DNA of 64,000 nucleotides from Macrostomum lignano (taxonomy: Eukaryota), in the NCBI GenBank assembly GCA_002269645.1, contig NIVC01001761.1, positions 124,001 to 188,000 on the forward strand, written 5' to 3'. A model generated the notes under the pieces. That model searched no databases. It worked only from the letters and a program-made list of their open reading frames with translations, and was not told the DNA's origin. Numbering within the stretch: position 1 is the first letter of the stretch; every line of letters starts with the position of its first letter. Shown piece by piece: positions 420-40,200 of the stretch. The position numbers and the translations under genes are program-made.

Positions 420-7903
<7,484 letters not shown>

Positions 7904-19259: not shown

Positions 19260-22200
19260 CAGGACCAGCCCCTGCTGTACATTGGCAACATTCCCTCCCG
19301 CTACCAGGCCAGGGACTTGCGCCGTTTCTTTGCCACCTCCGTGGAGTCGGGGGCGTTCGCCTGCTTCCATTTCCGGCATCGACCTCAGCGCATTGCCGCT
19401 GCTGCATCGACTTCAGCAGCCGCGTCGTCTGGCAAGAAGGCGCCACGCCTGCTGTGCTGCTACGCTCGAGCCAGCTCGCCTCAGGCCGCCAATGAGGTGA
19501 GGACCGTCACAACTTGCATGGCCCAGCTGTCACCGAAGGCTGTGGTCCAAATTGTGATTGAGTTGGCGTGCGCCTCCAGTGCTATGAAATGCCCTTTAAA
19601 GTTACAGCCCACATCAGTATAAGTGTGAAAACCCAGGAAATTCTCTAAACACTTTGGAACCCACCTAGTAGAGGTTCGAATTTGCTTCTTGAAACCCTGA
19701 AAGCGATTAAGGACTCACGGATCATCTCTAACGTCAGAATAATACGCTCGTAACCCTCTAATTTTTTGGAGCTCCCGACACTGGAACACCTCTAGTGACC
19801 CCGGAACCCTCTAGTGACCCTGGAACCCTCTAGTGACCCTGAAACCCTCTAGTGACAATAGGACCCCTGTAGTGACCCTGGAACCCCTCTAGTGACCCTG
19901 GAACCCTCTAGTGACCCTGGAACCCTCTAGTGACCCTGGAACCCTCTAGTGACCTTGGAACCCTCTAGTGACCCTGGAACCCTCTAGAGACCCTGGAACC
20001 CCTCTAGTGACCCTGAAACCCTCTAGTGACAATAGGACCCCTGTAGTGACCCTGGAACCCCTCTAGAGACCCTGAAACCCCTTTAATGACCCTGGAACCC
20101 CTGTAGTGACCCTGGAACCCTCTAGTGACCCTGAAACCCTCTAGTGACAATAGGACCCCTATAGTGACCCTGGAACCCCTCTAGTGACCCTGGAACCCTC
20201 TAGTGACCCTGGAACCCTCTAGTGACCCTGGAACCCTCTAGTGACCCTGGAACCCCTCTAGTGACCCTGGAACCCTCTAGTGACCCTGGAACCCTCTAGT
20301 GACCCTGAAACCCTCTAGTGACAATAGGACCCCTGTAGTGACCCTGGAACCCCTCTAGAGACCCTGAAACCCCTTTAATGACCCTGGAACCCCTGTAGTG
20401 ACCCTGGAACCGCTCTAGTGACACCAAAGCATCCCTCTAGTGACCTTGGAGCCCTCTAGTGACTGCGGGTCTCGTAAGGAACCACAGAAACAAACCGGAG
20501 AATCTGAAACCGGAGCCTCTCCATCGCTCTCCATCGCAGGTGATGAGGCTGCACAGCGGCAGCCAGTGGCGCGCCTACTCCGGCGTCAGGGAGCTGCCGC
20601 TCGGCCTGCGCTGCCTCATCTCCGTCTGCGACTCGGCCTCCGCCGCGGTGCCCGCCGGGTTGACCGCCGATCTCCGGAGCCTGACGGGGCCGCAGCTGGC
20701 CAGGGCATTGAAGCGGCACGGCCTGCAGGTTGGTGGCGGCGCCGTCCCGTCTTGAAATTCGATGCTGCAACAGCAGATCTCACCCCTGAGATAGCAGATC
20801 TCACCCCTGCGACAGTAGATTTCACCCCTGCGATAGCAGATCTCACTATATGCATCTGCAGATCTCACCCCTGCAACAGCAGATCTCACCCCCTGCAATC
20901 AGCAGATCTCACCCCCTGCGACAGCAGATCTCACCCCTGAGATAGCAGATCTCACCCCTGCAACAGCAGATCTCACCCCTGCGACAGTAGATTTCACCCC
21001 TGCGATAGCAGATCTCACTATATGCATCTGCAGATCTCACCCCTGCAACAGCAGATCTCACCCCCTGCAATCAGCAGATCTCACCCCCTGCAACAGCAGA
21101 CATCTCACCCCCTGCAATTAGCAGATCTCACCCCCTGCAACAGCAGATCTCACCCCCTGCAATTAGCAGATCTCACCCCCTGCAATCAGCAGATCTCACC
21201 CCCTGCAATTAGCAGATCTCACCCCCTGCAATCAGCAGATCTCACCCCCTGCAATCAGCAGATCTCACCCCCTGCAATCAGCAGATCTCACCCCCTGCAA
21301 TTAGCAGATCTCACCCCCTGCAATCAGCAGATCTCACCCCTGCAACAGCAGATCTCACCCCCTGCAATTAGCAGATCTCACCCCCTGCAATCAGCAGATC
21401 TCACCCCTGCAACAGCAGATCTCACCCCCTGCAATCAGCAGATCTCACACCAGCAACAGCAGATCTCACCCGCTGCGATAGCAGATCTCACCCCTGCAGA
21501 TCTCAGTCCGTGGGATTCTAGACTCCAGTTATTAAGTAAAAAGGAAAAACTCCAGTTAGCCAAGATCTGCTAACTCAGGGGTGAGATCTGCAATCGCAAA
21601 GGCTGAGATCTGCAGTGAAACTCTGCTGTCTACCTATGCAGGTGGGCGCCAGCGGCCGGCCGCAGCCTGTGGAGCTGTGCCCGCCAGCCTGCATGCCGCA
21701 GGGCAACGTTGGCACGCCAACCAGCCACTTCCTTGGCCTGGTGCAGCGCTGCCAGCTTCCTGCAGGCCTCATCGCCAGCCTGGGCCTGGATCTGCGCTCG
21801 GCCGGCAAGCGGCGGGGCAAATTCTCCGCCGTGCCCTTCGACTACGGCGGCGCCGTCCGAAGCTTCTCGACGTCTGCGCCGCCGCGGGTCGATCTTGATG
21901 AGGAAGATTCGAACATGGCCGAAAATCATTTACGGCCAGACACTCCGGACGAGGAGGCCGGACAAGCGGCTGGCGGCACGGATGATGAAGAGGAGGCTGA
22001 AGAGGAAGACGAGCCAGCCGAGGACTGGGAGCGGTTCGAGGCGCTTCACGACGATCCGCACAACGTGGACCGGTGGAAAGAGCGCAAGTGAGTTTATGGT
22101 GATGATGCGCTACTTATGACTACTGCAGTTAGTAGTGTGATGGGAACTCATGCGATTTCTTTATGAAAGTTGAAAATTGATCTGACGTGGTAGAGTGACA

Positions 22201-23971
22201 AGCAGACACCATTGGGACTGACAGGTGAACAATCTAGAGTGACAAGTGAACAACCCGGAGAGTGACAGGTGAACAACCCAGAGAGTGACAGGCGAACAAC
22301 CCAGAGAGTGACAGGTGAACAACCCAGAGAGTGACAGGTGAACAACCCAGAGAGTGACAGGCGAACAACCTAGAGAGTGACAGGCGAACAACCCAGAGAG
22401 TGACAGGCGAACAACCCAGAGAGTGACAGGCGAACAACCTAGAGAGTGACAGGCGAACAACCCAGAGAGTGACAGGCGAACAACCCAGAGAGTGACAGGC
22501 GAACAACCTAGAGAGTGACAGGCGAACAACCTAGAGAGTGACAGGCGAACAACCTAGAGAGTGACAGGCGAACAACCTAGAGAGTGACAGGCCCCCAGCG
22601 GAGTCCATTCCTTACTGCCGCAAATTCCGAAACGCAGATACGAGGAGCCGCTGGAAATCGTGTGGGAGAAGGGCGGGCCCGGCCTGGTGTGGTACACGGA
22701 CGAGCAGTTCTGGCGCCAAGGCGAGAAACTCGAACTATTCGATGACCCAACCAACTACGACTGGGACCTGGACATGTCCGCCTACGAGGCCGCCGGGGAC
22801 GCCGCGCCTGGAGACGCGGACGCGCGCGACCTGCTGGACATGCGGCGCTTCGGCGCGTTCGAGCGGCACACGCGCGGCTTCGGGTCCGACCTGCTCAGGC
22901 GGCAGGTGAGCGACTGGGAGGGGGGATGAGGCTTTGAGCTTGGCTTCTTGGACTGAAGACTGGTGGCGGCCCGAACAAATTGAATAGAGCTCAAAACATT
23001 TTAGTGAGAAGTTGACCCGATTAGAGTTGGAAGTGGACAAACAGTAGGAAATCAGGCTCGGTAGACATTGGAGTGCGCAGTAGGCTTAGAAGTAGACATA
23101 CGGGAGGGAAAAGTACGAGTAGACGCAGTTGAGTGAGAAGTAGACATAGTTAAGTGTGAAGTAGACTCGGTTAAGTGTGAAGTAGACTCGGTTAAGTGAG
23201 AAGTAGACAGTTGAGTGAGAAGTAGACATAGTTAAGTGTGAAGTAGACTCAGTTGAGTGAGAAGTATACTTAGTTGAGTGAGAAGTAGACATAGTTGAGT
23301 GTGAAGTAGACTCAGTTGAGTGAGAAGTAGATACAGTTGTGAGAAGTAGACACATTTCAGTGAGAAGTAGACAGTTGAGTGAGAAGTAGACACAGTTGAG
23401 TGAGAAGTAGACATAGTTAAGTGTGAAGTAGACTCAGTTGAGTGAGAAGTAGACAGTTGAGTGAGAAGTAGACATAGTTAAGTGTGAAGTAGACTCAGTT
23501 GAGTGAGAAGTAGACTTAGTTGAGTGAGAAGTAGACTCAGTTAAGTGAGAAGTAGATAAGGTAGGTTCTGTCTCGCACCCGCAGGGCTGGGCGGGTCCGG
23601 GCTCGGCGGTTGGCGGCAGCGGCAGCGGAGGCGGCGGCCTGACGGAGCCGCTGTCGGCGGAGCCGCGCCCATCGCGCGCCGGCTTCGGCTACCGCGGCCC
23701 CGCACTGCTGCCCCGCGGCCACCCGACCTCCACTGACAAGTTCAATTCCAATGGCCTGACGCGCCGGGAAGCGGCGCTGGTGGCGCGCGCGCGAGCGACC
23801 GGCGCCTACGTGGCTGCGGCGCACGACCGGCCGGCAGTCCGGGCCGCCGTGGACCCCGGAGACAGCCTGCTGGTGCGGGCGAATCCCGACAGGCTGAAGT
23901 ACCGCCCGGCTGCCGAGGCTGCCAGCGCCGCCGCTCATGCTGGAGGCCGCGGCGCCGGCAGTAGCAAATGA
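19260..23971 (+). CDS. GPATCH3: G-patch domain-containing protein 3 (first coding exon/start codon not located)
   Basis: Exons 19260-19496, 20540-20728, 21642-22087, 22638-22905, 23585-23971 with matching phases. Motifs LLYIGNIPSRYQARDLRRFF...CFHFRHRP, MPQGNVGTP, EDWERFEALHDD, WEKGGPGLVWYTD, WDLDMSAY, G-patch FERHTRGFGSDLLRRQGWAGPG...AGFGY follow the order recalled for human GPATCH3. Confidence 0.9.
19790..20460. repeat. 19-20-bp minisatellite CCCTCTAGTGACCCTGGAA, GPATCH3 intron
   Basis: Direct inspection. Confidence 0.95.
20770..21500. repeat. About 22-bp minisatellite GCAGATCTCACCCCCTGCAATCA, GPATCH3 intron
   Basis: Direct inspection. Confidence 0.95.
22190..22590. repeat. 23-bp minisatellite GAGAGTGACAGGCGAACAACCCA, GPATCH3 intron
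   Basis: Direct inspection. Confidence 0.95.
23085..23560. repeat. About 21-bp minisatellite AGTTGAGTGAGAAGTAGAC, GPATCH3 intron
   Basis: Direct inspection. Confidence 0.9.
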
Positions 23972-24042
23972 GTAGTATGCGGCGCAATTTCCGCGCGGAT
24001 TTGTCTGCAGTCTTTCGGTTTTTGTTTTCTGTCCTTCTGTTT

Positions 24043-24500
24043 CCGCCCCTCGGTCTCCGCCCCTCGGTCTCCGCCCCTCGGTCTCCGCCCCTCGGTCTCC
24101 GCCCCTCGGTCTCCGCCCCTCGGTCTCCGCCCCTCGGTCTCCGCCCCTCGGTCTCCGCCCCTCGGTCTCCACCCCTCGGTCTCCGCCCCTCGGTCTCCGC
24201 CCCTCGGTCTCCGCCTCTCGGTCTCCGCCCTTCGGTCTCCGCCCCTCGGTCTCCTCCCTCCCGGTCTCCGCCCCTCGGTCTCCTCCCTCCCGGTCTCCGC
24301 CCCTCTGTCTCCGCCCCTCTGTCTCCACTCCTCTGTCTCCACTCCTCGGTCTCCACTCCTCGGTCTCCGCCCCTCGGTCTCCGCCCCTCTGTCTCCGCCC
24401 CTCGGTCTCCGCCCTCGGTCACCGCCCCCGGTCTCCGCATCTCTGTCTTCGCTTCTCGGTCTCCGCCCCTCGGTCTCCGCCCCTCAGGCTTCACCCCTCG
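24043..24500. repeat. 14-bp minisatellite CCCTCGGTCTCCGC downstream of the GPATCH3 stop
   Basis: Direct inspection. Confidence 0.95.
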
Positions 24501-24879
24501 GTCTCTGCCCTCTGCCTCTCTGCCACCTTATTCAGTGATCAGCTGATGCAGCTATCTTTCTGCGCGATAAATCTTGTAAATACTCGTAAAGTGAGGCATG
24601 TTTGCAGTGTAAAATAAACCCGCACATAACAGATTTACATTTTGCGCTTCCACTGCGCCAATGCTATTGGCTATTCAGCTTGAATATTAATTTCTGCTTA
24701 TTATTTTGACTTTAGTTTTAACTTTTTGATTTTTGAAGTTTTTGTTAACTCTGTGTTAGCGTAAGATTAGAAGTTAGAAATTAATTTCTGTGCAAAGTAG
24801 TCTGAAAATTGTTTAGCTGGCACGAGGCGGACACTTCAAGCAAGTACAAGATGTACTTTCCTGTGTGAAACACTGGCTC

Positions 24880-25140
24880 GAAGAGGGTCGGTTTTTGAGA
24901 AAGATGGGGGCGATTCTCCAGGAGAGTCGGTTTTGAGGAAGAGGGGGCAATTCTCCAGGAGAGTCGGTTTTGAGGAAGAGGGGGCGATTCTCCAGGAGAG
25001 TCGGTTTTTTGAGAAAGAGGGGTGCGATTCTCCAGGAGAGTCGGTTTTTGAGAAAGAGGGGGGCGATTCTCCAGGAGAGTCGGTTTTTGAGAAAGAGGGG
25101 GGCGATTCTCCAGGAGAGTCGGTTTTTGAGAAGGGGGCGA
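24880..25140. repeat. About 38-39-bp minisatellite GCGATTCTCCAGGAGAGTCGGTTTTTGAGAAAGAGGGG
   Basis: Direct inspection, about 6 copies. Confidence 0.9.
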
Positions 25141-26348: not shown

Positions 26349-27104
26349 ATGCGATTTTTACTGCCGAATCTGGCGCTGAGCGCCCTGGCGGTGGGCCTTG
26401 CGATGGCGGTCTTGATGCCTGCGCCCGCTGCCGCGTTCAGCTTCAGACTGTTCCGCCGGTCCGCCAACTTCAGCACCAACGCGACCGTCGCCGTGAAGAA
26501 TGCAACCAACGTCACTTATGGTGGCTACGCCCGAACTGTGCAGTTCCTTGTGCGAAAGGTGGACGACTCGACTCCGTACTACAGGTGATTCGCGCTTGTT
26601 CGCCTTCAGTAGTTGCAAAGTGAGTACGTGTTATCATAAGCGCAATACATTAATCAATTTTCCCAACATATACCGGCATTTAACAGGAGTATGGCCTTCC
26701 AAGTGCCGGAGGAGCTCAACTACATGATGGGCGACAACCTGTACAGGGACTTCGCCAGTGCTTTGGGGCGCCACTGCAACGTCACTAACATCACTCGGAT
26801 TGTGCGCAACAACCTGCAGCTGCTGCAGACTGACGATGACGTCTGGAGGATCCAAGACGGCGACCGTATCGAGATCTGGACAAACAGCAGCGGGCCGGCG
26901 ACCAGGGCGGAAACCGCTAGCGCCTTCGCCAAGGCACCCCGTAGGAAGGGCTGCCCGCCAATGGGACCTCCAGGTCGTCCCGGACGCCCTGGTGGTCGTC
27001 CCGGTCGTCCCGGACGTCCCGGTCGTCCAGGAGGTCGCATGGAAGAGATGACGATCGGAGAGGAGCCCATTGTGGTGCCCGACTGGGACGAAATGGACGA
27101 CTGA
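26349..27104 (+). CDS. Orphan secreted protein, 217 aa: signal peptide, N-glycosylation sequons, small globular domain, C-terminal (P)GRP repeats and acidic tail
   Basis: Exons 26349-26584 and 26687-27104 (AG|GTGATT ... TAACAG|G), 654 nt in frame, GC-rich codon-like composition. Hydrophobic N-terminus MRFLLPNLALSALAVGLAMAVLMPAPAAA. Confidence 0.7.
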
Positions 27105-28384: not shown

Positions 28385-31300
28385 ATGAGCAGCCTGTGGT
28401 CCGCCTACCCGTCGGTGACGCAGCTTCGCCAGCTGCTTGATGACAAAGCTGAGGACGTTGACAGTCGTCAGAATGACCGGACGCTGCTGCACCGGGCCGC
28501 GACAGACAACAAACTTGAGGTGATCCGTCTGTTGAAGGAGCACGGCGCCGATCTGAACGCCTTAAACAGCGCAGGCAAGTCGGCTCTCAACCTGGGCCTC
28601 GAGAAGCGCCACTTTGAGACCGTGGAGCTGCTGCTAGAGCTGGGAGCCGATCCTAACACTGCCACTGTGAACACGGAGTCGACCCTGCACCAAGCGGCCG
28701 CAATCAAAGACTCCAGGTTCATCAGCCGACTGCTCGCACATGGAGCCAAATGCAATGCGCCGGATCGGTTGAACGACTGGCCAATCCATCGGGCCTCCCT
28801 AGAGGAGTACCTGGAGACGGTGGGCGTCCTCCTACATGAACACTCTGAGCACATCAACGTCATTGGCAACCGCGGACTCACCCCGCTGCACATCGCGGCC
28901 ACAAACAGCAACGCGGAACTGTTTGCCGTACTTGTTGAGCACGGAGCCGACATTGCTGTTAAAGACTTGCAAGGACGGACGCCGCTTGATCTGGTGATCA
29001 TGAACCAGGACAACGCAATCCTCGATACCTACGGGTATCTGCTGGCGAACAAGGTAGTCAAGTGTCCGGAAGCCGGAAGTTTCCGCACGGTTTTCAGCAC
29101 GGACTCAGCTAGAAAGTTTTTAGACACTCTGACCAAGATTGACAACGAGTACAGGCGCACTTTCGTCCCAACGGACACAGACATTGAGTACTTCCAAAAC
29201 CGGCTGGATGAAGCAACCAACGAAATGCTGTTGAGCTATATTGAGTCAGACGAACGAATCGACATCAACGAGTTTGTACAGATCATAATCCGAGCTGTAA
29301 GCAACGGCTTGGTAGACGAAATCATCTCCAAGGACCTGGTGCCCAAGATAGCAGAGAGCATCTTTCGACATGTGCTCGTAACTGAGAATGAGATTTTGCT
29401 GCAGGAACTCATGAATCTAGGAGTTCTGTGGGGCAAGATCGTTCAATTCTTGGAAAGTAACATAGTCGAGGTGTACGAGAAGACGCTTATTGCAAAGCGG
29501 GTGGGGATCCGAGGCCTGGTCTGGCGCGAGTGCCTTAAAGACGAAGATGATGAAGACGAAGACGAAGACCAGAAGCAACAAACGAAAATCCTCGGTTCCG
29601 GCGAAAGCTTGCAAGAAGTGACGCAACGAGTCTCCTACGACAAGCTGCACATGCTAGTGTCCAAAACCACGAAACTGTGGCAGCTGAGGCACACCGACTT
29701 CATTGACGAACAGACGGATCGTTGCAACTTGGACTCGCCGATAGAAGTAATGAAGGACCCAGTCCGTACCCTGGCTATGTGGAGCGTGCTCACAGGCCGG
29801 TTTAAGTTAACGCCACACCTTCTGCGCCAAGAGCCGTACGATCTCATCCCACAGGCGCTTCTCATGGCTAAACTGCTTCGCTGCCTCAGCATCCTGCGAA
29901 GCATCGAGGACGTTTATAGAAACAAGGCAATAAATATGGCCAACACGTGCGAGGGGATCGCTATTCAAGCTCTGCGACGCATTAAGGAATTCGACACGTC
30001 GCAGAACAACATTCTCACCATGGAGTACCTGAGGCTTCCGCTCCGATCCTACGGTGACTACGACGCCATCGACCTGGCCGCCAGGGGCGAGTCCAGCAGC
30101 TTCGTCACCATCGATGTGGTACAGGACACGTTAGACATGTTCTGGTACTCCGACTTCTTCTTCGTCCGCAGCAACGTCTGGAAGATGGAGGGCGCCATTC
30201 TCATGGGTTTCGTGCCGCCGCTCATGCTGCTCCTACCGCTGATCATGGAACGCTTCCGTAAAGAGTCGCCAACCTTTAAGAATCCTGAGATCTTGCAGGA
30301 CAGCAAGTTCGTGCAGGTGAAAAGCGCGTTGCACAGCCACAACGAGCATCACGGGCACGAGATGACAGGCGCAGAGGAGCGGCTCCTGCCGCAGCCACCT
30401 GAAGCGGAAGTGCCGCCCAAGAAGCCATCGTATGTGCGGCGAGTATTCAAAGAGTTAAACGCCTTCTATGATATCCCCTGCGTAAAATTTCGGTTCCACG
30501 TGACGGCGCACGTGATGTTTGTTCTGCTTCTGTCGTTCGTCGTGATGCGCCTATTCAACAAGAGGATGAGTGTGTCGGAGTGCATCTGCTACGTGTGTCT
30601 GCTGGGCTTTCTGGTGGAAGAAATTAACGAGATCTTCAAGAGCAAAAAGGACGAATCGCTCGCCTCCTACTTCTCGGATGGCTGGAACCTGATCGATCTG
30701 ACGGCTATACTTTGTGGCATCATAAGCTTTGCGTTGAGGCTGGATGACGAAATTTCAGGAAAGTCTGAGCATGCTGAGAGTGTTCGATACTGGGCTCTGG
30801 TGCTGCTGTCAACAACCTGCCTGGTGTACTGGATTCGACTGCTATTCGTTTCGGTGATCTTGGAAAGCCTCGGCCCCAAGCTGAAGATGATGGCGCTCAT
30901 GGTGAAGAAAGACTTCCTGCCATTCTTGTATATCCTGTTCATCCTGATGATCGGCTTCGGAGTTGTGTTCCAGGCGCTGCTGTACCCACCGACCAACTTT
31001 GGCACATCATCTCTGAGCCCAGGGGATACCGACAACGGCACAGAGGCGCAGGAGATCGCTGTGCGGATGTTCAGAACGACCTTCTTTATGATCGTCGGCG
31101 AGTACGGCCTGGATGACAAGACGAATCTCTGCAGTTCTCCGGATGCCAAAGAAGACTGCGTTCACGAGACAGGATCTCTGCTGGTTACTAACATCTTCAT
31201 GGTCATCTACATCGTGATAGTCCAGATTCTTCTGCTCAACGTCATCGTGGCGATGTTTAGCGAGACAATTGACGCCGTGAATCGCGAGTCAACCGCCATG

Positions 31301-31747
31301 TGGCAGTTCGAGAAGTACGACCTCACCCAAGAGTTCTTCATGCGCTCCAAGCTGCCGCCACCGTTCAACGTGCTGCTGGAGCTGCGCCGCCTCATCGCGT
31401 GGATCATCAGGCGCTTCCGGCGAAACAAGAGTAGCGACGGCAAGCGAACAGCACCGCGCAGCACCGAGAAGAGCGAAGTCGAGGTGTTCCTCTACTACTT
31501 GTACTACCAGGCCATCAGCTGCAGGGGCCAGCGCTCCACCTTCCGAGGCGTCGTGATCGACGAGGAAGATCTGGACGAGGGCAACAAGATAATCTTTGAG
31601 CAGATCAAGGACATTCAAAAGGAGCTGAAGCGCCTGCGGAAACTGGAGACGCTCGTCCAGAAGATGAGCAACAGCAGTTCAGGACCGAGCAGGCAGCTGC
31701 CCCCGCATCGGCAGCTGGCTGCCCTGGCTGAAAACCAGGACACCTGA
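28385..31747 (+). CDS. TRPM: Intronless TRPM-like cation channel with about 5-6 N-terminal ankyrin repeats (1120 aa)
   Basis: Single ORF. Ankyrin repeats (RTLLHRAA..., LTPLHIAA...GADIAVKDLQGRTPLDL). TRPM MHR4-like segment DPVRTLAMWSVLTGR...AIDLAARGESSSFVTIDVVQDTLDMFWY. S1 IPCVKF, S3 YFSDGWNLIDL, S4-S5 WIRLL...LGPKLKMM, pore FFMIVGEY, S6 ILLLNVIVAMFS, TRP box WQFEKY...LPPPF, C-terminal coiled coil. Confidence 0.9.
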   Translation: MSSLWSAYPSVTQLRQLLDDKAEDVDSRQNDRTLLHRAATDNKLEVIRLLKEHGADLNALNSAGKSALNLGLEKRHFETVELLLELGADPNTATVNTESTLHQAAAIKDSRFISRLLAHGAKCNAPDRLNDWPIHRASLEEYLETVGVLLHEHSEHINVIGNRGLTPLHIAATNSNAELFAVLVEHGADIAVKDLQGRTPLDLVIMNQDNAILDTYGYLLANKVVKCPEAGSFRTVFSTDSARKFLDTLTKIDNEYRRTFVPTDTDIEYFQNRLDEATNEMLLSYIESDERIDINEFVQIIIRAVSNGLVDEIISKDLVPKIAESIFRHVLVTENEILLQELMNLGVLWGKIVQFLESNIVEVYEKTLIAKRVGIRGLVWRECLKDEDDEDEDEDQKQQTKILGSGESLQEVTQRVSYDKLHMLVSKTTKLWQLRHTDFIDEQTDRCNLDSPIEVMKDPVRTLAMWSVLTGRFKLTPHLLRQEPYDLIPQALLMAKLLRCLSILRSIEDVYRNKAINMANTCEGIAIQALRRIKEFDTSQNNILTMEYLRLPLRSYGDYDAIDLAARGESSSFVTIDVVQDTLDMFWYSDFFFVRSNVWKMEGAILMGFVPPLMLLLPLIMERFRKESPTFKNPEILQDSKFVQVKSALHSHNEHHGHEMTGAEERLLPQPPEAEVPPKKPSYVRRVFKELNAFYDIPCVKFRFHVTAHVMFVLLLSFVVMRLFNKRMSVSECICYVCLLGFLVEEINEIFKSKKDESLASYFSDGWNLIDLTAILCGIISFALRLDDEISGKSEHAESVRYWALVLLSTTCLVYWIRLLFVSVILESLGPKLKMMALMVKKDFLPFLYILFILMIGFGVVFQALLYPPTNFGTSSLSPGDTDNGTEAQEIAVRMFRTTFFMIVGEYGLDDKTNLCSSPDAKEDCVHETGSLLVTNIFMVIYIVIVQILLLNVIVAMFSETIDAVNRESTAMWQFEKYDLTQEFFMRSKLPPPFNVLLELRRLIAWIIRRFRRNKSSDGKRTAPRSTEKSEVEVFLYYLYYQAISCRGQRSTFRGVVIDEEDLDEGNKIIFEQIKDIQKELKRLRKLETLVQKMSNSSSGPSRQLPPHRQLAALAENQDT

Positions 31748-32254: not shown

Positions 32255-33619
32255 TCACTCGACCATCCAGTTCGAAATACAGCACTGAGACGGCAGTTCG
32301 TTTCTCTCGAATTTTATTCCCTGACTGACTGACTGACTGACTGACTGACTGACTGACTGACTGACTGACTGACTGACTGACTGACTGACTGACTGACTGA
32401 CTGACTGACTGACTGACTGACTGACTGACTGACTGACTGACTGACTGACTGACTGACTGACTGACTGACTGACTGACTGACTGACTGACTGACTGACTGA
32501 CTGACTGACTGACTGACTGACTGACTGACTGACTGACTGACTGACTGACTGACTGACTGACTGACTGACTGACTGACTGACTGACTGACTGACTGACTGA
32601 CTGACTGACTGACTGACTGACTGACTGACTGACTGACTGACTGACTGACTGACTGACTGACTGACTGACTGACTGACTGACTGACTGACTGACTGACTGA
32701 CTGACTGACTGACTGACTTGAGTGAGCGGTATGTCGACACGGCAGCGTTTTGCTGAGGACCAGCGCTCACAGCAGACGGCGGCACGAACCCGGAGTTGGA
32801 GAAGAAGTCGCGGCTTGACGGAGACGCCGAAGTGACGCCGACCTCAACGAATCCATTCGGGTCAAACGAGTTCGTGGCAGAAGGTGTGAAGTACTCAAAG
32901 TAAGATGAAGCCACCCTGAAGAAGTACAGGCCCCATCCACCAGTCCAGCCGTCCAAAAAAGCAGCGCCCCGATCCCCCGTGGAGTCGCAGTTGTAGGATT
33001 CGAGCAGCGGTGCCTCTACTCGGACAGTCCGCTTGAGCCTGACCAGCCACGTGAGTCCCTGCTGCACGCTCGCGAGCTCCACGTTCTCCAGCCACATCTT
33101 GGACGACACTCCGTCGAGCTTGGCTCCCTCGCTGCTCCACTCCACATTCTCCGACATCCACTGCTGCGTCTGGCCGCACACCAAGTTGCTCCTGCTGGCG
33201 TCCGCATCGTTGCTCATCACCCAGGCGGCCCTCAGCTTCGAGCCCACACCCAGCATGAGCTTCCTGCTCAAGGTGAGGAACTTGGCATTGGCGAATGCGG
33301 CACAGCGGCGGGGCTGCGAGCTCTCTGCAGCAGCGAGTCCATCGATGAGGTGGCACACTGCGGTGTATTGGAAGAGCGAGCACTGGCGAGTGTCCGAGTC
33401 GAACTGGGCCACCAGCAGTTTGCTCGAGCCAGCCTTCATGAGGCACTCGCTGATGCCTCTCTGATTCTGAGTCGCTCGCACTGCCAGATTCTCAGCCAGG
33501 CACTGCGGGCTGCTCAGGCGGTGCCAGGAGCTCGACAGTCTCTCGCAGTGGACCAGCTGGGCCAGGCAGGCCGCTGCAAGCAGAACGGAGACTGGAGTAG
33601 CGATGAAGCTGGTTGCCAT
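32255..33619 (-). CDS. Secreted protein with PAN/apple-like domain and LamG/concanavalin-like domain; 3' end uncertain, interrupted by a (GTCA)99 array
   Basis: Likely ATG at 33619 (MATSFIATPVSVLLAAACLAQLVHC, signal-like). Cys pattern C..SECL...FDSDTRQCSLF resembles PAN/apple; GAKLDGVSSKMWL, TWLVRLK and VEVGVT resemble LamG-type beta-sandwiches. Donor-like CAA|GTCAGT at the array start; the terminal exon could not be resolved. Confidence 0.6.
   Translation of the reverse strand: MATSFIATPVSVLLAAACLAQLVHCERLSSSWHRLSSPQCLAENLAVRATQNQRGISECLMKAGSSKLLVAQFDSDTRQCSLFQYTAVCHLIDGLAAAESSQPRRCAAFANAKFLTLSRKLMLGVGSKLRAAWVMSNDADASRSNLVCGQTQQWMSENVEWSSEGAKLDGVSSKMWLENVELASVQQGLTWLVRLKRTVRVEAPLLESYNCDSTGDRGAAFLDGWTGGWGLYFFRVASSYFEYFTPSATNSFDPNGFVEVGVTSASPSSRDFFSNSGFVPPSAVSAGPQQNAAVSTYRSLKSVSQSVSQSVSQSVSQSVSQSVSQSVSQSVSQSVSQSVSQSVSQSVSQSVSQSVSQSVSQSVSQSVSQSVSQSVSQSVSQSVSQSVSQSVSQSVSQSVSQSVSQSVSQSVSQSVSQSVSQSVSQSVSQSVSQGIKFERNELPSQCCISNWMVE
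32321..32718. repeat. Perfect (CTGA)99 microsatellite
   Basis: Counted from the line coordinates; no interruptions seen. Confidence 0.97.
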
Positions 33620-35829
33620 GCTGGCTGCAGTGCGGTATTGCGGATGCGAGAGCTCGGGATGAGGCAGTCGGCAGAAATCCTGCATGCAGTAAAATTTATC
33701 TCTGCTCCCATTGTTGAGTTTAATCGCCCCTAGCAACCAGCTGTTGTCCAAGCCGTCAGCTCAGACTGCAGCCACCTCAGCCCCTCCGACGTCCCACGCT
33801 GGTCATGAATTACGAAATTTGCCAAATGGGGGAAGGCGGGCGCCGCTCCGCATGCTGCATGTGGCGCGGAGCTGCGAAGCTGTTGGGCTTGCCGCCGGCA
33901 GGCAGGAGGAAATTTAATCGCCCTACCAGCAGCTTTTCAAGTCATCGGCCCCACCTCAGAGACTGTTAACTTTCCCAAGCTGGGAAAGCCGTTGCGCTGC
34001 CTCATCAACACACCTGCTGGGCTCTCCGCATGCAGAGATGCCTACAAGCCGCGTGCACATCAAGGTGGGGCTGTTGCTGCGGCTCAGGCGGGGATGGGCG
34101 CAGATGAGGCTGGGCAATCAGCAGCAGAGACCGTCAGCGGGAAGCCGCGTGGCCGATGTGGGCGGCCCGGGAGTCGCCTTCCCGCGCTGCCTCCTGAGCG
34201 CATTGTGAAAAAATGTACTTCTTTACTGTGCAGGGCAGTTTTTTTTCCAACTGACTGAATTGATAGAAACTCTGCATAATCCCCAGTTAGTATTGGCGCC
34301 CTCTAAGACTCTAATTTGGCGTAATATTTCAGTTTGCAATGCATCCCCATTGCGGCCGCTACTCTACTCCATCAAGCAGCCCAGAGAAGTGGAATGGTGC
34401 GGATTTTCATTCCAGCTCATCTATATGCGAGCTCGTGCGCCTGGCGACAGTCTTTTGAATTGAACTCCATATCTTTATTTGTATGGTGAAGGCTTGCTTG
34501 CGATGCACTGGCATTTTGGACTTGTCACCTGGCACTTGAGCTCAGCTTGTCATACATGTGACTTATGCTCTTGCCAGATATGACAGTGTGCCCTTGTGCC
34601 ACTTCTTAGTGCGAGTTTATGCGATAGCACAATCCTGGTAATGTACATGAATGGTGCTGCCAAGCAGCTGTATGTTATGACAGTACGCCTATAGTACGAC
34701 TTTCTTTGTTTTGCAAAATCGTTGACCTTTATTCGCCTGATTTTCGGCAAAAACACGGGTACGCTAGGCCTGTCGGTACGCCCCACACAAAGGCCTATTC
34801 TCAGCCGGGTCCCAGTTGTAGAGAATTCTTTGCCTGAGCCACTCCATCAGTTCAGCCAGCAGACGGCCATGCAGAGCGGCATCGGAGGGCAGGCCGATCA
34901 GTGACGGCCGCGGACCCTCCTGGCAACGGGATGAGATCGACCCGGTCAGGAGACAACTTGGACCGAGCTGGAGAAGACCCGGACACCTCCCGGACACGAG
35001 CAGAGAATGTACCGCTGACGGGGAGGGACTGAAAGCACTGGGAGGGACAGAAGCCTAGCGAGAGCGTTTAGAATCCCCACTCCGCTATCCCTGCGAGGGC
35101 CCCCTAGCAACTGTATGGCTGGTTTAGTGTTTCTGGGCTACCCTTCATCAGGGGCTGCGTCTCAGTCAAAACACTGCGAATGCGTACCGTTGTGAAGGCG
35201 CTCCCTCAGCCTCAAATGAGAAATGATTTTGAGAATATTATCTTTTCCACTCTTCAGGCTCTTGGCTGCATGCTGGTAGGGAGAGTTGGCTGACCAGGTG
35301 CATTGCCCTTGAACAGCATGAGCTGCACGCGGTCGCCTCTCAAGCGCGCTCTCTCAATCTGGGAAGACAAGCGCGCCAAACGAGAGTTCGCCCTGCAGCT
35401 CCTGCTCAACTGATTTTTTCCATTAGGAAATTTTCCATGTTTTATTCGTTTAATAATAGTTAGTACTCGCCTCAGAGTACACCACGAGTCTGCGACATCT
35501 AATTATCGTGAATGACAGATTGACAATTGTCATATTGACATATTGAATAACAATAAAACGCTTGTTCAGGTAAAACTCTATTATACAGTTATAATAATAT
35601 TACAAGGCTTTTACATAGAAATTTCATTATACTAGATTGAATATGGAAGCAACACAGCACACACGTGCATACTTAATTTGATTCTTAAAGTTGTGAAAAC
35701 TTGGCGTGGGATTGAGGACTAGCAGGGACTCCATATTTACAGGATTTGCCACTCAGAGCAATTGTTAATGGATGAATCATGCCAACTATAGTAATGACAA
35801 GCATGCATGAGTGACTTCAAAATGACCCT

Positions 35830-37270
35830 TAGTCAATCCCCAGTCACTCCAGCACTGCCCAGTCACTCCAGCACTGCCCAGTCACTCCAGCACTGCCCAG
35901 TCACTCCAGCACTGCCCAGTCACTCCAGCACTGCCCAGTCACTCCAGCACTGCCCAGTCACTCCAGCACTGCCCAGTCACTTCAGCACTGCCCAGTCACT
36001 CCAGCACTCAACCAGTCACTCCAGCACTCAACCAGTCACTCCAGCACTCAACCAGTCACTCCAGCATCAACCAGTCACTCCAGCACTCAATTAGTCACTC
36101 CAGCACTCAATCAGTCACTCCAGCACTCAATCAGTCACTCCAGCACTCAATCAGTCACTCCAGCACTCAACCAGTCACTCCAGCACTCAACCAGTCACTC
36201 CAGCACTCCCCAGTCACTCCAGCACTGCCCAGTCACTCCAGCACTGCCAAATCACTCCAGCACTCAACCAGTCACTCCAGCACTGCCCAGTCACTCCAGC
36301 ACTGCCCAGTCACTCCAGCACTGCCCAGTCACTTCAGCACTGCCCAGTCACTCCAGCACTCAACCAGTCACTCCAGCACTCAACCAGTCACTCCAGCATC
36401 AACCAGTCACTCCAGCACTCAATTAGTCACTCCAGCACTCAATCAGTCACTCCAGCACTCAATAAGTCACTCCAGCACTCCCCAGTCACTCCAGCACTCA
36501 ACCAGTCACTCCAGCACTGCCCAGTCACTCCAGCACTGCCAAATCACTCCAGCAGTGCCCAGTCACTCCAGCACTGCCCAGTCACTCCAGCACTGCCCAG
36601 TCACTCCAGCACTTCCCAGTCACTCCAGCACTCCCCAGTCACTCCAGCACTCAACCAGTCACTCCAGCACTCAACCAGTCACTCCAGCACTCAACCAGTC
36701 ACTCCAGCACTCAACCAGTCACTCCAGCACTGCCCAGTCACTCCAGCACTGCCCAATCACTCCAGCAGTGCCCAGTCACTCCAGCACTCCCCAGTCACTC
36801 CAGCACTGCCCAGTCACTCCAGCAGTGCCCAGTCACTCCAGCACTGCCCAGTCACTCCAGCACTGCCCAGTCACTCCAGCACTTCCCAGTCACTCCAGCA
36901 CTGCCCAGTCACTCCAGCACTGCCCAGTCACTCCAGCACTGCCCAGTCACTCCAGCACTGCCCAGTCACTCCAGCACTGCCCAATCACTCCAGCAGTGCC
37001 CAGTCACTCCAGCACTCCCCAGTCACTCCAGCACTGCCCAGTCACTTCAGCACTGCCCAGTCACTCCAGCACTCAACCAGTCACTCCAGCACTCAACCAG
37101 TCACTCCAGCACTCAACCAGTCACTCCAGCACTCAACCAGTCACTCCAGCACTCAATTAGTCACTCCAGCACTCAATCAGTCACTCCAGCACTCAATCAG
37201 TCACTCCAGCACTCAATCAGTCACTCCAGCACTCAACCAGTCACTCCAGCACTCCCCAGTCACTCCAGCA
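35830..37270. repeat. 19-bp minisatellite CAGTCACTCCAGCACTGCC, about 75 copies, beginning across the SNX19 stop codon
   Basis: The minus strand of the first unit reads CTG GAG TGA CTG. Confidence 0.95.
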
Positions 37271-40200
37271 GCCGCAGCGCCAGCAGGCACTCGAAGCCGC
37301 AGGCTGCCAGGAGTCGCCGGTTGTCGCACTCGGAGCCGAGGACTTGGCGAGCCTCATCGGCCAGTCGGCCCGTCCAGTCCGGCCCGAGCTGCCACCGGCA
37401 CAGCAAGCTGAGCAGCCTGGGCGGCGGCGGCGGCTTTGGCGGCTGAGGCGGGGCTTCGAGCTCATCAGCGACAGCATGGAGCTGCTGCTGGCGAGTCGCC
37501 AGGATCAGCCAGTCCAGCAGCCTCCGGAGCCGCTCAGGGGCGAGCAGCCGGCGGCTGCCCAGGTGGACGGCCCTGGAATTAAAGTTCACGGAATTCACCA
37601 ATTCTTTACAAAGTTCACTCATCTCACAGGTCACTAATCCCACGGGTCACTAATCTGACAGGCCACTAATCCCACAGGCCACTAATCCCACAGGCCACTA
37701 ATCCCACAGGTCACTAATCTGACAGGTTACTAATCCCACAGGTCACTAATCCCACGGGTCACTAATCCCACAGGTCACTAATCCCACAGGTCACTAATCC
37801 CACAGGTCACTAATCCCACAGGTCACTAATCCCACAGGTCACTAATCTCACAGCCGGAGTCACAGGTCACTAATCCCACGGGTCACTAATCTCACAGCCG
37901 GAGTCACAGGTCACTAATCCCACAGGTCACTAATCTCACAGCCGGAGTCACAGGTCACTAATCCCACAGGTCACTAATCTCACAGCCGGAGTCACAGGTC
38001 ACTAATCTCACAGCCGGAGTCACAGGTCACTAATCCCACAGGTCACTAATCTCACAGCCGGAGTCACAGGTCACTAATCTCACAGCCGGAGTCACAGGTC
38101 ACTAATCTCACAGCCGGAGTCACAGGTCACTAATCCCACAGGTCACTAATCTCACAGCCGGAGTCACAGGTCACTAATCCCACAGGTCACTAATCTCACA
38201 GCCGGAGTCACAGGTCACTAATCCCACAGGTCACTAATCCCACGGGTCACTAATCCCACAGGTCACTAATCCCACAGGTCACTAATCCCACAGGTCACTA
38301 ATCCCACAGGTCACTAATCCCACAGGTCACTAATCCCACAGGTCACTAATCTTACAGGTCACTAATCCCACAGGTCACTAATCCCACAGGTCACTAATCC
38401 CACAGGTCACTAATCCCACAGGTCACTAATCCCACAGGTCACTAATCTTACAGGTCACTAATCCCACAGGTCACTAATCCCACAGGTCACTAATCCCACA
38501 GGTCACTAATCTTACAGGTCACTAATCCCACAGGTCACTAATCCCACAGGTCACTAATCCGAAAATTAAGGTACGCACACAAAGAGAGACAGAAGTGTAA
38601 AATATTGATTCTAATTTTGTGCCAAGATTTTGTTCATACAGATCCGGGCCACTCAAAAATCAGATTTGATTGGAGTAACAGGATCAAGAGAAGGCCGTAC
38701 CAGTGGATGCAGTGCAAGCGATGAGCTGCAATGACTTACCTGGCAACCGCTAGAGCAGTCAGCCGGCACAGCGGTCCCTGAAGCACCGCTGGCCACCAGG
38801 TGGGGCGGTAGCGTTCCGTGAGCAGCAGGGCCAGCTGGTGGGCTGCTGCCTCCAGGTCGTGCAGGGTTTCGACCTCCGCGTCAGCGGCTCCGGAGCGCGG
38901 CAGCGGGGGTGGAGGTAGAGGAGCGTCTTAAAGAATTGAAATGGGCTGGGTCAAGACATGTTTCAAGAAGTGGGTCGAGAGCTAGTTAAAGACATGTTTC
39001 AAGAAGTGGGTCGAGAGCTGGTTAAAGACATGTTTCAAGAAGTGGGTCGAGAGCTGGTTAAAGACATGTTTCAAGAAGTGGGTCGAGAGCTGGGTCAAGA
39101 CATTTTTCAAGAAGTGGGTCGAGAGCTGGTTAAAGACATGCTTCAAGAAGTGGGTCGAGAGCTGGGTCAAGACATTTTTCAAGAAGTGGGTCGAGAGCTG
39201 GGTCAAGACATTTTTCAAGAAGTGGGTCGAGAGCTGGTTAAAGACATGCTTCAAGAAGTGGGTCGAGAGCTGGGTCAAGACATTTTTCAAGAAGTGGGTC
39301 GAGAGCTGGGTCAAGACATTTTTCAAGAAGTGGGTCGAGAGCTGGGTCAAGACATGTTTCAAGAGGTGGGTCGAGAGCTGGTTAAAGACATGTTTCAAGA
39401 AGTGGGTCGAGAGCTGGGTCAAGACATGCTTCAAGCGGGTCGATTTATGTAGACTCACAGCGGTCTCGGTCAGCTGCCAGGGCGGCTAGCTTCCTTTCCT
39501 CATCAGCGATCAGCTGAGCAGCCTGTGGGATCTTAAAGGGAAAGCCAAGAGACTGTGAAATTGCAGGAAAACATTTACAGCATACTCTACCAAACTTAAA
39601 ACCTACATCACCAAAACTACAGCCGACTCTACCAAATCTATAGCCTACTCTACCAAATCTACAGCCGACTCTACCAAATCTACAGCCGACACTACCAAAT
39701 CTACAGCCGACTCTACCAAATCTACAGCCGACTCTACCAAATCTACAGCCGACTCTACCAAATCTACAGCCGACTCTACCAAATCTACAGCCGACTCTAC
39801 CAAATCTACAACCTAATCTGTCAAATCTACAGAAACTCTACAAAAAGCCTACTTTACCTAATCTGAAGCGTACTCTACCAGATATCCAAAGTTCTATGCC
39901 GAATCTGTCCCACATTCAAACAAATTGTTTCTAATTAGTTTAAACTAGAAAACAAATACCTAATACTCATGGCTCATGTTACCACAATGCGCAGAGAACT
40001 GACTCTGAGCGCAGAGAAGGCGAGCCAGAGATTATAATCAGTTTTATGACTAGCAATAAAAATTGAAGCCAATAAAAGACAAAAACTGAGCAGGTTTGCT
40101 CAGCTGGCAGACTGTTGGGGCTCAGCAACTTGAGTAAAATTAGAGTACAAACGCAAAACCGCCTGCGGCTGCGAGCAGACTGACAATAAAAAAGGCCATG

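What the first reader, a model, noticed from the sequence alone, without database searches (positions are those of the whole stretch)
28385..31747. Ankyrin-TRPM chimeric ion channel
Seen: about 5-6 ankyrin repeats (aa about 30-205) directly precede MHR3/4-like helices, a TRPM-type six-TM core, TRP box and coiled coil. No SLOG/MHR1-2 region and no C-terminal NUDT9H or kinase domain are apparent. Established: ankyrin repeats characterise TRPA/C/N/V, whereas canonical TRPMs have MHR1-4 and no ankyrins. Inference: domain swapping produced a non-canonical TRPM with a different gating or sensor module. The pore/S6 is divergent (RTTFFMIVGEY; LLLNVIVAMFS). I cannot confirm whether such fusions are already catalogued in flatworms or other lophotrochozoans.
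Basis: partly seen in the sequence, partly recalled or inferred. Interest (0 to 1): 0.78.

Follow-up and report, generated by a model that had tools for sequence, protein, structure and literature searches.

The report
Flatworm ankyrin-TRPM-like channel, known clade
This is a real, intact gene of the free-living flatworm Macrostomum lignano for an ion channel with ankyrin repeats in front of a TRPM-type core, but it is not a new chimera: the same architecture is already known from parasitic flatworms as TRPM_MCLZ, the target of the drug meclonazepam.

Summary
Window 28385-31747 (+) is one uninterrupted 1120-codon ORF of Macrostomum lignano (contig NIVC01001761.1). It encodes six ankyrin repeats, a helical linker, an MHR4-type domain, six TM helices, a TRP helix and a C-terminal coiled-coil-like helix. 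There is no SLOG/MHR1-2, NUDIX or kinase domain. The TM core is TRPM-type: the 60 best PDB sequence hits are all TRPM1-8.

One detail is wrong. The pore and S6 are not divergent; they match the TRPM consensus.

The fusion is neither unique nor new:
- All SLOG-less relatives form one clade (NJ bootstrap 100%).
- That clade includes trematode, cestode and monogenean proteins.
- Those parasite proteins carry the residue fingerprints published for TRPM_MCLZ (Smp_333650), the meclonazepam-activated 'TRPM-like' channel. It was described in 2023-2026 as lacking SLOG and having N-terminal ankyrin repeats.
- Trees built from the ankyrin/linker part and from the core agree, so the fusion arose once, before Macrostomum and the parasites diverged.

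The possibly new points are modest. The clade exists in a free-living flatworm, and there it has radiated into at least ten paralogue clusters. The window gene is one intronless member.

Most likely function: a tetrameric, Ca2+-permeable non-selective cation channel, gated through its S1-S4/TRP pocket. The native stimulus is unknown.

The parts
28385..31747 (+). Complete intronless coding sequence (1120 aa plus stop) of an ankyrin-TRPM-like (TRPM_MCLZ-clade) channel of Macrostomum lignano
   Evidence: Single ORF. Upstream in-frame stops. Identical public gene product on NIVC01001761.1.
28385..29059 (+). N-terminal ankyrin repeat domain, aa 1-225: an N-terminal cap plus six repeats
   Evidence: Pfam Ank, Ank_2, Ank_3, Ank_4 and Ank_5, E 1e-18 to 4e-25. 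Ankyrin-1 and DARPin PDB hits. Six helix pairs at 33-aa spacing in the AF2 model.
29060..29704 (+). All-helical linker domain, aa 226-440, in the position of MHR3. It contains an acidic low-confidence loop (DEDDEDEDED, aa 386-395).
   Evidence: AF2 helices. The linker alone against canonical MHR3 is not significant (hhalign E 0.036). It aligns colinearly but weakly when anchored by MHR4. The linker length of 195-240 aa is conserved in 14 of the 16 clade members measured; the two unidentified MetaClust proteins have 119-131 aa.
29705..30469 (+). MHR4-type and pre-S1 region, aa 441-695, including a disordered loop at aa 655-682
   Evidence: PF25508 TRPM2-like, aa 381-574. phmmer to TRPM3/7/4 starts at aa 441-458. 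hhalign Prob 99.7, E 1.5e-25.
30476..31264 (+). Six-TM channel domain S1-S6, aa 698-960. Candidate Ca2+ site: E746, E749, N768, D771. S4 pocket residue F821.
   Evidence: Ion_trans E 9e-18. The top 60 PDB hits for aa 667-1030 are all TRPM1-8, E 4e-28 to 1e-18, and the alignment to human TRPM2 places E746/E749/N768/D771 on E843/Q846/N869/D872. Residue positions checked.
31046..31120 (+). Pore helix and selectivity-filter region, aa 888-912 (…FFMIVGEYGLDD…)
   Evidence: AF2 helix 888-904. Matches the TRPM consensus YxxIxGExxLD. Aligned to the filter of the TRPM2 chanzyme.
31265..31342 (+). TRP helix, aa 961-986, with TRP box WQFEKY (aa 973-978); followed by the PPPFN motif at aa 991-995
31577..31675 (+). 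C-terminal long amphipathic helix, aa 1065-1097; a putative tetramerisation coiled coil
   Evidence: AF2 helix. The roughly heptad spacing of I/L/V/M was read from the sequence. There is no Pfam TRPM_tetra hit, so this part is inferred.

Best explanation
The gene encodes a functional subunit of a tetrameric TRPM-like cation channel. It belongs to the flatworm 'ankyrin-TRPM-like' clade, whose parasite members are the meclonazepam target TRPM_MCLZ. It is one of at least ten diverged paralogue clusters produced by a Macrostomum-specific radiation of that clade.

Shown:
- A canonical six-repeat ankyrin domain takes the place of the SLOG/MHR1-2 nucleotide-binding module.
- The ankyrin-core fusion is a single old event, shared with trematodes, cestodes and a monogenean.

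Inferred:
- The channel is non-selective and Ca2+-permeable. It has a Glu in the filter, as (from my own knowledge of those channels) TRPM3/7 do. Sm.TRPM_MCLZ conducts Ca2+ with a linear I-V relation reversing near 0 mV.
- It is gated through the S1-S4/TRP cavity, where MCLZ, PZQ and icilin act in relatives.
- Gating may depend on intracellular Ca2+, because the four VSLD Ca2+-site positions are E/E/N/D.
- It cannot use SLOG- or NUDT9H-dependent ADP-ribose gating.
- The ankyrin domain probably supplies inter-subunit or partner contacts.

The native stimulus is unknown. With Phe at the key S4 position (F821, as in cestodes) it is predicted to be poorly sensitive to meclonazepam.
For: Architecture.

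TRPM-type core:
- phmmer against PDB: aa 441-1021 aligns to TRPM3/7/4/2 at E~1e-33.
- TM core alone: the top 60 hits are all TRPM.
- Foldseek top hits are TRPM2/5/4/3/8/7, with TM-score 0.69 relative to an N-truncated TRPM4.

Clade:
- An exhaustive HMMER search of 1.84 billion representatives gave 1554 hits. The best 9 besides the query itself, and 13 of the best 17, are Ank-bearing and SLOG-less. The others among the best 17 are short or N-terminally truncated, and all 17 lack SLOG.
- NJ tree of 89 cores (503 columns): SLOG-less clade 100%, M. lignano radiation 100%, parasite subclade 100%.
- The tree of the ankyrin+linker part has the same branching order, with the deep splits at 98.5-100% and some nodes inside the M. 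lignano radiation at only 36-68%.
- 0 of 71 clade-type cores has SLOG.

The parasite subclade is TRPM_MCLZ:
- S3 residues are I-D in trematodes and L-E in Hymenolepis.
- The S4 residue is F in cestodes, Y in a fasciolid and H in O. viverrini copy 2.
- TRP residues are R-T in trematodes and K-S in cestodes.
- These match the published I892L, D893E, H946F/Y and R1120K/T1121S variants.
- The S3-to-S4 spacing is identical (54 residues).
- O. viverrini models carry two TM domains, matching the published exon 3a/3b (PMC12861061).

Published function of Sm.TRPM_MCLZ: PMC10788528.

Low intron content is a family trait: none here, about 100 and about 820 nt in two paralogues, and 3 exons in schistosomes (PMC11731825).
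Against: - No expression or functional data exist for this gene or any M. lignano paralogue.
- S. mansoni TRPM_MCLZ itself was never retrieved. The word-indexed searches failed, so identification of the parasite subclade rests on published residue fingerprints, protein length and exon duplication, not on an accession match.
- The trees are neighbour-joining with a simple distance, not maximum likelihood, and have no outgroup.
- Homology of the aa 226-440 linker to MHR3 is not established.
- The coiled coil gets no Pfam support.
- Ion selectivity, Ca2+ dependence and the pocket-gating mechanism are extrapolated from relatives that share only about 30% identity in the core.
Confidence: 0.85

Rival explanations
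1. The ankyrin-TRPM-like clade is an old, separate TRP family. On this view it is sister to TRPM, or to TRPM+TRPS, and kept ancestral ankyrin repeats. It would not be a flatworm TRPM that swapped SLOG for ankyrins.
For: The midpoint root of the NJ tree falls on the long stem between the SLOG-less clade and all SLOG-bearing TRPMs. The published flatworm TRP tree places TRPM_MCLZ 'next to' the other TRPMs and proposes the label 'TRPM-like' (PMC12861061). Himmel et al. infer that ankyrins were lost before the TRPM-TRPS split (PMC7306681), so an ankyrin-bearing sister lineage is conceivable.
Against: Among 1.84 billion representatives, every identified SLOG-less member is a flatworm protein. The only others are four unidentified Logan or MetaClust sequences nested inside the flatworm clade. 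The best-scoring SLOG-bearing relatives are flatworm TRPMs from S. rodhaini and M. lignano, which fits an origin inside Platyhelminthes followed by fast divergence. Midpoint rooting is unreliable with a long stem.
Confidence: 0.12
2. The protein is an artefact or a dead copy. Either an ankyrin gene and a 5'-truncated TRPM were fused by mis-assembly or mis-annotation, or this is an intronless processed pseudogene.
For: The gene has no introns. The M. lignano assembly is repeat-rich and polyploid, and some public models of paralogues are clearly mis-merged, for example the 2903-3003 aa integrase fusions.
Against: The 3363-nt ORF is uninterrupted. The same Ank-linker-core order and linker length are found in independently assembled genomes of three parasitic classes. 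The N-terminal and core trees are congruent. Near-invariant functional residues are retained: GP(K/R)L in the S4-S5 linker, N768/D771, the S6 LLLN…AMFS motif, the TRP-box Trp and the PPP motif. Paralogues have only tiny introns, so low intron content is normal for this family.
Confidence: 0.03
3. The TM core really belongs to an ankyrin-bearing TRP family (TRPC, TRPN, TRPA or TRPV), and the TRPM resemblance is superficial.
For: NOMPC (5vkq) is rank 3 in Foldseek and scores E 3e-42 in the full-length PDB phmmer search.
Against: The NOMPC matches come from the ankyrin repeats: the best stretch is query aa 56-208. With the ankyrins removed, the first 60 PDB hits are exclusively TRPM1-8. PF25508 (a TRPM-specific domain) and MHR4 homology are present. 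The TRP box, S6 and pore motifs match the TRPM consensus.
Confidence: 0.01

Closest known systems
TRPM_MCLZ (Schistosoma mansoni Smp_333650 and its orthologues in 'all parasitic flatworms'); the 'TRPM-like' clade of Rohr et al. 2026 (PMC12861061), Park et al. 2023/24 (PMC10788528) and Sprague et al. 2024 (PMC11731825)
   Same: - N-terminal ankyrin repeats.
- No SLOG/MHR1-2, no NUDIX and no kinase domain.
- TRPM-type VSLD, pore and TRP helix.
- Few or no introns.
- Same clade in both the core tree and the N-terminal tree (bootstrap 100%).
- Conserved linker length between the ankyrins and MHR4.
   Different: - Only about 23-27% identity to the aligned clade members outside M. lignano over the core.
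- Shorter (1120 vs 1380 aa).
- Belongs to a Macrostomum-specific radiation of at least 10 paralogue clusters, whereas the parasite literature describes one TRPM_MCLZ per species.
- The S4 pocket residue is Phe (the cestode-like, MCLZ-insensitive state) and the TRP residues are R-S.
- Comes from a free-living flatworm, a group not sampled in the TRPM_MCLZ papers I could read.
- No functional data.
Canonical TRPM channels (TRPM1-8, nvTRPM2, choanoflagellate TRPM2 chanzyme)
   Same: - MHR4, S1-S6, pore helix and filter, S6 gate motif, TRP box and post-TRP PPP motif.
- The four VSLD Ca2+-site positions are occupied by E/E/N/D.
- A long C-terminal helix.
- Best sequence and structure matches in the PDB.
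   Different: - Lacks the SLOG/MHR1-2 domain that defines TRPM N-termini and carries a canonical ankyrin repeat domain instead.
- No NUDT9H or kinase domain.
- MHR3 homology is not demonstrable by sequence.
Flatworm TRPMs with ankyrins N-terminal to SLOG (M. lignano P0025; Clonorchis/Opisthorchis 'TRPM2' P0129)
   Same: Flatworm TRPM-family channels with N-terminal ankyrin repeats.
   Different: They retain LSDAT/SLOG and a full TRPM2-like domain, and they fall in the SLOG-bearing flatworm TRPM group of the tree. Their ankyrin block shows no special similarity to this one (E 2e-4).
TRPN/NOMPC, TRPA, TRPC and TRPV (the ankyrin-bearing TRP families)
   Same: An N-terminal ankyrin repeat domain ahead of a six-TM TRP core.
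   Different: The core is not of these families: none appears among the best 60 PDB hits once the ankyrins are removed. This protein has six repeats, against the far longer NOMPC array (29 repeats by my recollection of the published structure, not checked here).

Membership tests
TRP channel superfamily, group 1 | Six TM helices with a pore loop between S5 and S6, followed by a TRP helix | tested here: met
   Ion_trans at aa 710-968. AF2 shows S1-S6, a pore helix and a TRP helix. The WQFEKY TRP box is at aa 973-978.
TRPM (melastatin) family | TM core, S6 and TRP region closest to TRPMs by sequence and by fold | tested here: met
   The top 60 PDB phmmer hits of aa 667-1030 are all TRPM1-8, E 4e-28 to 1e-18. 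Foldseek top hits are TRPM.
TRPM (melastatin) family | N-terminal SLOG/LSDAT (MHR1-2) domain | tested here: not met
   No PF18139 hit at E<=1. No hit with a SLOG HMM built from canonical TRPMs in the hit set, which matches 83 of the 190 proteins then on file. The AF2 N-terminus is an ankyrin solenoid.
TRPM (melastatin) family | MHR3 and MHR4 helical domains preceding S1 | tested here: inconclusive
   MHR4 is met: PF25508 at 29.3 bits against a cutoff of 27, and hhalign E 1.5e-25. MHR3 is not shown: the linker alone gives E 0.036.
TRPM (melastatin) family | C-terminal tetramerisation coiled coil | tested here: inconclusive
   AF2 shows a 33-residue helix at aa 1065-1097 with approximate heptad spacing, but there is no Pfam TRPM_tetra hit.
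Flatworm TRPM_MCLZ / 'TRPM-like' clade | N-terminal ankyrin repeats, no SLOG, and a TRPM-type core (architecture as published) | tested here: met
   compared with the descriptions in PMC11731825 and PMC12861061.
Flatworm TRPM_MCLZ / 'TRPM-like' clade | Groups phylogenetically with TRPM_MCLZ orthologues to the exclusion of SLOG-bearing TRPMs | tested here: met
   NJ bootstrap is 100% for the SLOG-less clade in the core tree. The N-terminal tree, built from clade members only, repeats its internal branching. The parasite members were identified as TRPM_MCLZ by five published residue positions, the S3-S4 spacing and the Opisthorchis exon-3 duplication. Caveat: Sm.TRPM_MCLZ itself is not in the tree.
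Flatworm TRPM_MCLZ / 'TRPM-like' clade | One-to-one orthology with Smp_333650 | tested here: not met
   The window protein lies in an M. lignano-specific radiation (11 sequences in the tree; at least 10 clusters at 50% identity). That radiation is sister to the subclade holding the parasite proteins and four unidentified sequences, so the window protein is a co-orthologue or paralogue, not the orthologue.
Flatworm TRPM_MCLZ / 'TRPM-like' clade | Activation by meclonazepam, which depends on His at the S4 pocket position (H946) | not testable with these tools
   The sequence has Phe at the equivalent position (F821). The published H946F mutation lowers potency more than 40-fold (PMC12861061), so low sensitivity is predicted.
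TRPS (soromelastatin) | [quoted passage not shown] | tested here: not met
   The protein has no SLOG or NUDIX and does have ankyrins. The definition is from PMC7306681. Phylogenetic placement relative to TRPS was not tested because no labelled TRPS sequences were available.

The most novel reading that the evidence does not exclude
The ankyrin-TRPM-like clade may be an ancient TRP lineage that branched off before SLOG replaced ankyrins in the TRPM/TRPS stem. That would make it a living intermediate between ankyrin-bearing TRPs and TRPMs, rather than a flatworm-specific domain swap. Its tenfold radiation in free-living Macrostomum, against one copy in parasites, could mark it as an environmental sensory receptor family that parasites pruned.
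Probability: 0.1. Interest if true: 0.6.

Novelty: new member of a known kind. Interest (0 to 1): 0.3.

Why it matters
TRPM_MCLZ is a validated anthelmintic target whose native activator and physiological role are unknown. So far it has been studied only in parasites.

Two points follow from this gene. First, the same ankyrin-for-SLOG architecture exists, and has multiplied, in Macrostomum lignano, a free-living flatworm used as a laboratory model. That offers a non-parasitic system in which to ask what these channels sense. Second, it dates the fusion to before the split of Macrostomorpha and Neodermata.

It does not overturn the TRP classification, because the architecture has been in the literature since 2023.

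Tried and rejected
1. Word-indexed homologue searches were nearly useless. The C-terminal 906 aa found only the query itself. A 10-sequence clade profile found only 4 M. lignano proteins. The Dicrocoelium core found 7 parasite proteins but no Schistosoma. As a result I never retrieved Sm.TRPM_MCLZ and could not make an accession-level match.

2. The supplementary FASTA files of the two TRPM_MCLZ papers are not held. I therefore had no labelled TRPC, TRPA, TRPML or TRPP outgroups and could not root the tree.

3. A stand-alone profile comparison of the aa 205-440 linker with canonical MHR3 was not significant. Only an MHR4-anchored alignment extends weakly into it.

4. I tested whether the ankyrin block of the Ank+SLOG flatworm TRPMs (P0025) is specially related to this one, as a stepwise-origin idea. 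The similarity was only generic ankyrin similarity (E 2e-4), so I dropped it.

5. I looked for a second TRPM-like copy in the window by tblastn and found none.

6. The origin of the Logan and MetaClust members (P0010, P0012, P0017, P0035) could not be determined. Only a run accession, DRR639838, was available.

7. I rejected the 'pore/S6 divergent' claim after comparing with the consensus of the 59-sequence alignment (TRPM and TRPM-like proteins).


Full report
**What is there**

Window 28385-31747 (+) is one ATG-to-stop ORF of 1120 codons, with in-frame stops immediately upstream. An exact-sequence look-up places it on Macrostomum lignano contig NIVC01001761.1 (assembly GCA_002269645.1). The public gene model there is this same uninterrupted ORF. 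The window is therefore from a free-living flatworm, and the gene has no introns.

**Domain anatomy**

- Pfam finds ankyrin families over aa 14-205 (E 1e-18 to 4e-25). It also finds the TRPM-specific PF25508 'TRPM2-like' domain at aa 381-574, just above its cutoff, and Ion_trans at aa 710-968.
- No LSDAT/SLOG, NUDIX or alpha-kinase domain appears even at E<=1.
- A SLOG HMM that I built iteratively from canonical TRPMs in the hit set recognises 83 of the 190 proteins then on file but not this one.
- An AlphaFold2 model made with a 59-sequence alignment is confident (pLDDT 81.7, pTM 0.80). It shows:
  - an N-terminal cap plus six ankyrin helix pairs at 33-residue spacing (aa 34-225);
  - an all-helical region (aa 226-655);
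  - S1-S6 (aa 698-960) with a pore helix (aa 888-904);
  - a TRP helix continuous with S6 (to aa 986);
  - two further C-terminal helices, the last of 33 residues (aa 1065-1097) with roughly heptad hydrophobic spacing.

**Is the core TRPM?**

Yes.
- The full protein aligns from aa 441 to aa 1021 with TRPM3, TRPM7, TRPM4 and TRPM2 structures at E about 1e-33.
- With the ankyrins removed (aa 667-1030), the 60 best distinct PDB sequences are all TRPM1-8 or TRPM2-like channels, at E 4e-28 to 1e-18.
- Foldseek of the model returns TRPM2, TRPM5, TRPM4, TRPM3, TRPM8 and TRPM7. NOMPC intrudes at rank 3 only because of its ankyrins.
- A profile-profile comparison of the pre-S1 region with canonical TRPMs is highly significant (E 1.5e-25), but it is confident only over MHR4, about aa 454-599.
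- The aa 205-440 linker alone is not significantly similar to MHR3 (E 0.036). 'MHR3-like' therefore remains an inference from position and helicity.

Against the consensus of the 59-sequence alignment of TRPM and TRPM-like proteins:
- S6 LLLNVIVAMFS matches LLLNLLIAMFS at 8 of 11 positions, and the differences are conservative.
- FFMIVGEYGLDD fits YxxIxGExxLDxI.
- WQFEKY fits WxFQRY.

**Relatives**

The word-indexed protein search found only the protein itself. An exhaustive HMMER scan of 1.84 billion representatives, using aa 215-1120 as query, gave 1554 hits.
- The best 9 hits besides the query itself, and 13 of the best 17, carry ankyrins. All 17 lack SLOG. The four without a detected ankyrin block are short or N-terminally truncated.
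- Ten of the 50%-identity representatives are M. lignano proteins at 29-52% identity.
- Others come from Opisthorchis, Dicrocoelium, Schistocephalus and Fasciolopsis. A later search added Paragonimus, Hymenolepis, Echinostoma and the monogenean Protopolystoma.
- Almost everything below these hits is SLOG-bearing canonical TRPM or a fragment.
- The best-scoring canonical relatives are flatworm TRPMs. Next come lophotrochozoan 'TRPM2' proteins.

**Phylogeny**

I built a neighbour-joining tree of 89 cores (503 trimmed columns, 100 bootstraps).
- It recovers all SLOG-less sequences as one clade (100%).
- Inside that clade, an M. lignano-only radiation (100%) is sister to a group that holds the trematode+cestode subclade (100%), two Logan sequences and two MetaClust sequences.
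- The window protein pairs with P0002 (79%).
- A tree built only from the ankyrin+linker part has the same branching order. The deep splits have 98.5-100% support, and some nodes inside the M. lignano radiation have only 36-68%.
- The distance from the last ankyrin to MHR4 is 195-240 residues in 14 of the 16 members measured. The two MetaClust proteins have 119-131.
- Of 71 proteins whose core scores better with the clade profile than with the canonical profile, none has SLOG. All that are not N-terminal fragments have ankyrins.

The fusion is therefore a single event that predates the split of Macrostomorpha and Neodermata. It is not a feature of this locus.

**Comparison with the literature**

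Himmel et al. (PMC7306681) describe TRPM and TRPS as ankyrin-free. A 2026 survey of metazoan TRPM evolution does not mention flatworms.

The parasitology literature already has this architecture:
- TRPM_MCLZ (Smp_333650; 1380 aa; three exons) is the schistosome channel activated by meclonazepam.
- It 'lacks the NH2-terminal MHR1/2 or SLOG domain' and has ankyrin repeats instead (PMC11731825; PMC10788528).

I could not retrieve the S. mansoni sequence itself. The parasite subclade of my tree nevertheless carries the published fingerprints (compared):
- S3 is I-D in trematodes and L-E in Hymenolepis (published I892L/D893E).
- The S4 residue is Phe in cestodes, Tyr in a fasciolid and His in the second O. 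viverrini copy (published H946F/Y; Fh Y994; Eg F952).
- TRP residues are R-T in trematodes and K-S in cestodes (published R1120K/T1121S).
- The S3-to-S4 spacing is identical, at 54 residues.
- O. viverrini gene models contain two tandem TM domains, as expected from the published alternative exons 3a and 3b.

No paper in the searchable library links TRPM_MCLZ with Macrostomum or planarians. The presence of the clade in a free-living flatworm, and its expansion there, may therefore be unreported.

**Likely mechanism**

Shown: the parts list above.

Inferred:
- Subunits tetramerise like TRPMs.
- The filter VGEY carries a Glu. Sm.TRPM_MCLZ passes Ca2+ and has a linear I-V relation reversing near 0 mV (PMC10788528). 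A Ca2+-permeable non-selective cation channel is therefore the best guess.
- The alignment to human TRPM2 puts E746, E749, N768 and D771 on E843, Q846, N869 and D872. By my knowledge of TRPM2/4/5/8 structures these are the VSLD Ca2+ site, so Ca2+-dependent gating is plausible.
- Without SLOG and NUDT9H, ADP-ribose gating is excluded.
- The S4 pocket residue is F821. The published H946F mutant loses more than 40-fold in potency, so meclonazepam sensitivity should be low.
- The role of the ankyrin domain and the native stimulus are unknown.

**Gene structure**

The gene is intronless. Two paralogues have only about 100 and about 820 nt of introns, and schistosome TRPM_MCLZ has three exons against 36 for TRPM_PZQ. 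Low intron content is a trait of the clade, not a sign of a processed pseudogene. The intact ORF and the conserved functional residues argue the same way.

**What stays open**

The tree has no outgroup. I cannot say whether ankyrins replaced SLOG within flatworm TRPMs or whether the clade is an older ankyrin-retaining sister of TRPM. The restriction of all identified members to flatworms, and the fact that flatworm TRPMs are the closest canonical relatives, favour the first option.

**Verdict**

The gene is a new (free-living, paralogous) member of a known kind. Interest is low to moderate.

Noticed in passing
window 32321-32718: A perfect (CTGA) microsatellite of 99.5 copies lies about 570 nt downstream of the channel gene. 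It creates a spurious 498-aa minus-strand ORF (32255-33751) full of SVSQ repeats.
   Followed up: partly
window 20000-25132 and 35839-39832: Dense blocks of different minisatellite arrays (periods 14-39 bp, up to 74 copies, e.g. 35839-37270) flank the gene region. They account for the strong local swings in GC content and GC skew.
   Followed up: no
window 58770-60029 (-) and 50580-51554 (-): Two long ORFs look like exons of ordinary host genes. One has Myb/SANT plus SWIRM-associated regions 1 and 3 (SMARCC/BAF155-like). The other has a Vps41 TPR-like region.
   Followed up: no
window 26691-27104 (+): A 137-aa ORF ends in a (GRPGRP)n collagen-like stretch, encoded by a short 30-bp tandem repeat at 26969-27037. 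Its significance is unknown.
   Followed up: no
proteins P0025 (M. lignano) and P0129 (Clonorchis/Opisthorchis), not in the window: A second flatworm TRPM lineage carries ankyrin repeats N-terminal to a retained SLOG domain: Pfam on P0025 gives Ank_2 + LSDAT_euk + TRPM2-like + Ion_trans, and my own Ank and SLOG HMMs find the same order in P0129. It sits among the SLOG-bearing flatworm TRPMs in the tree.
   Followed up: partly
proteins P0008/P0170 (Opisthorchis viverrini) and P0168/P0169 (M. lignano), not in the window: Some public gene models of clade members are mis-merged. The O. viverrini models contain two tandem TM domains (S4 RTLN, then RTLH), consistent with alternative exons 3a/3b being read through. 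Two M. lignano UniProt models of about 2900-3000 aa join an integrase to two channel units.
   Followed up: partly
locus L002 (Logan run DRR639838), 1298-4516: An unidentified organism encodes a 1072-aa ankyrin-TRPM-like protein as one uninterrupted ORF. In the tree it is sister to the parasite TRPM_MCLZ subclade, so it may come from another free-living flatworm.
   Followed up: no
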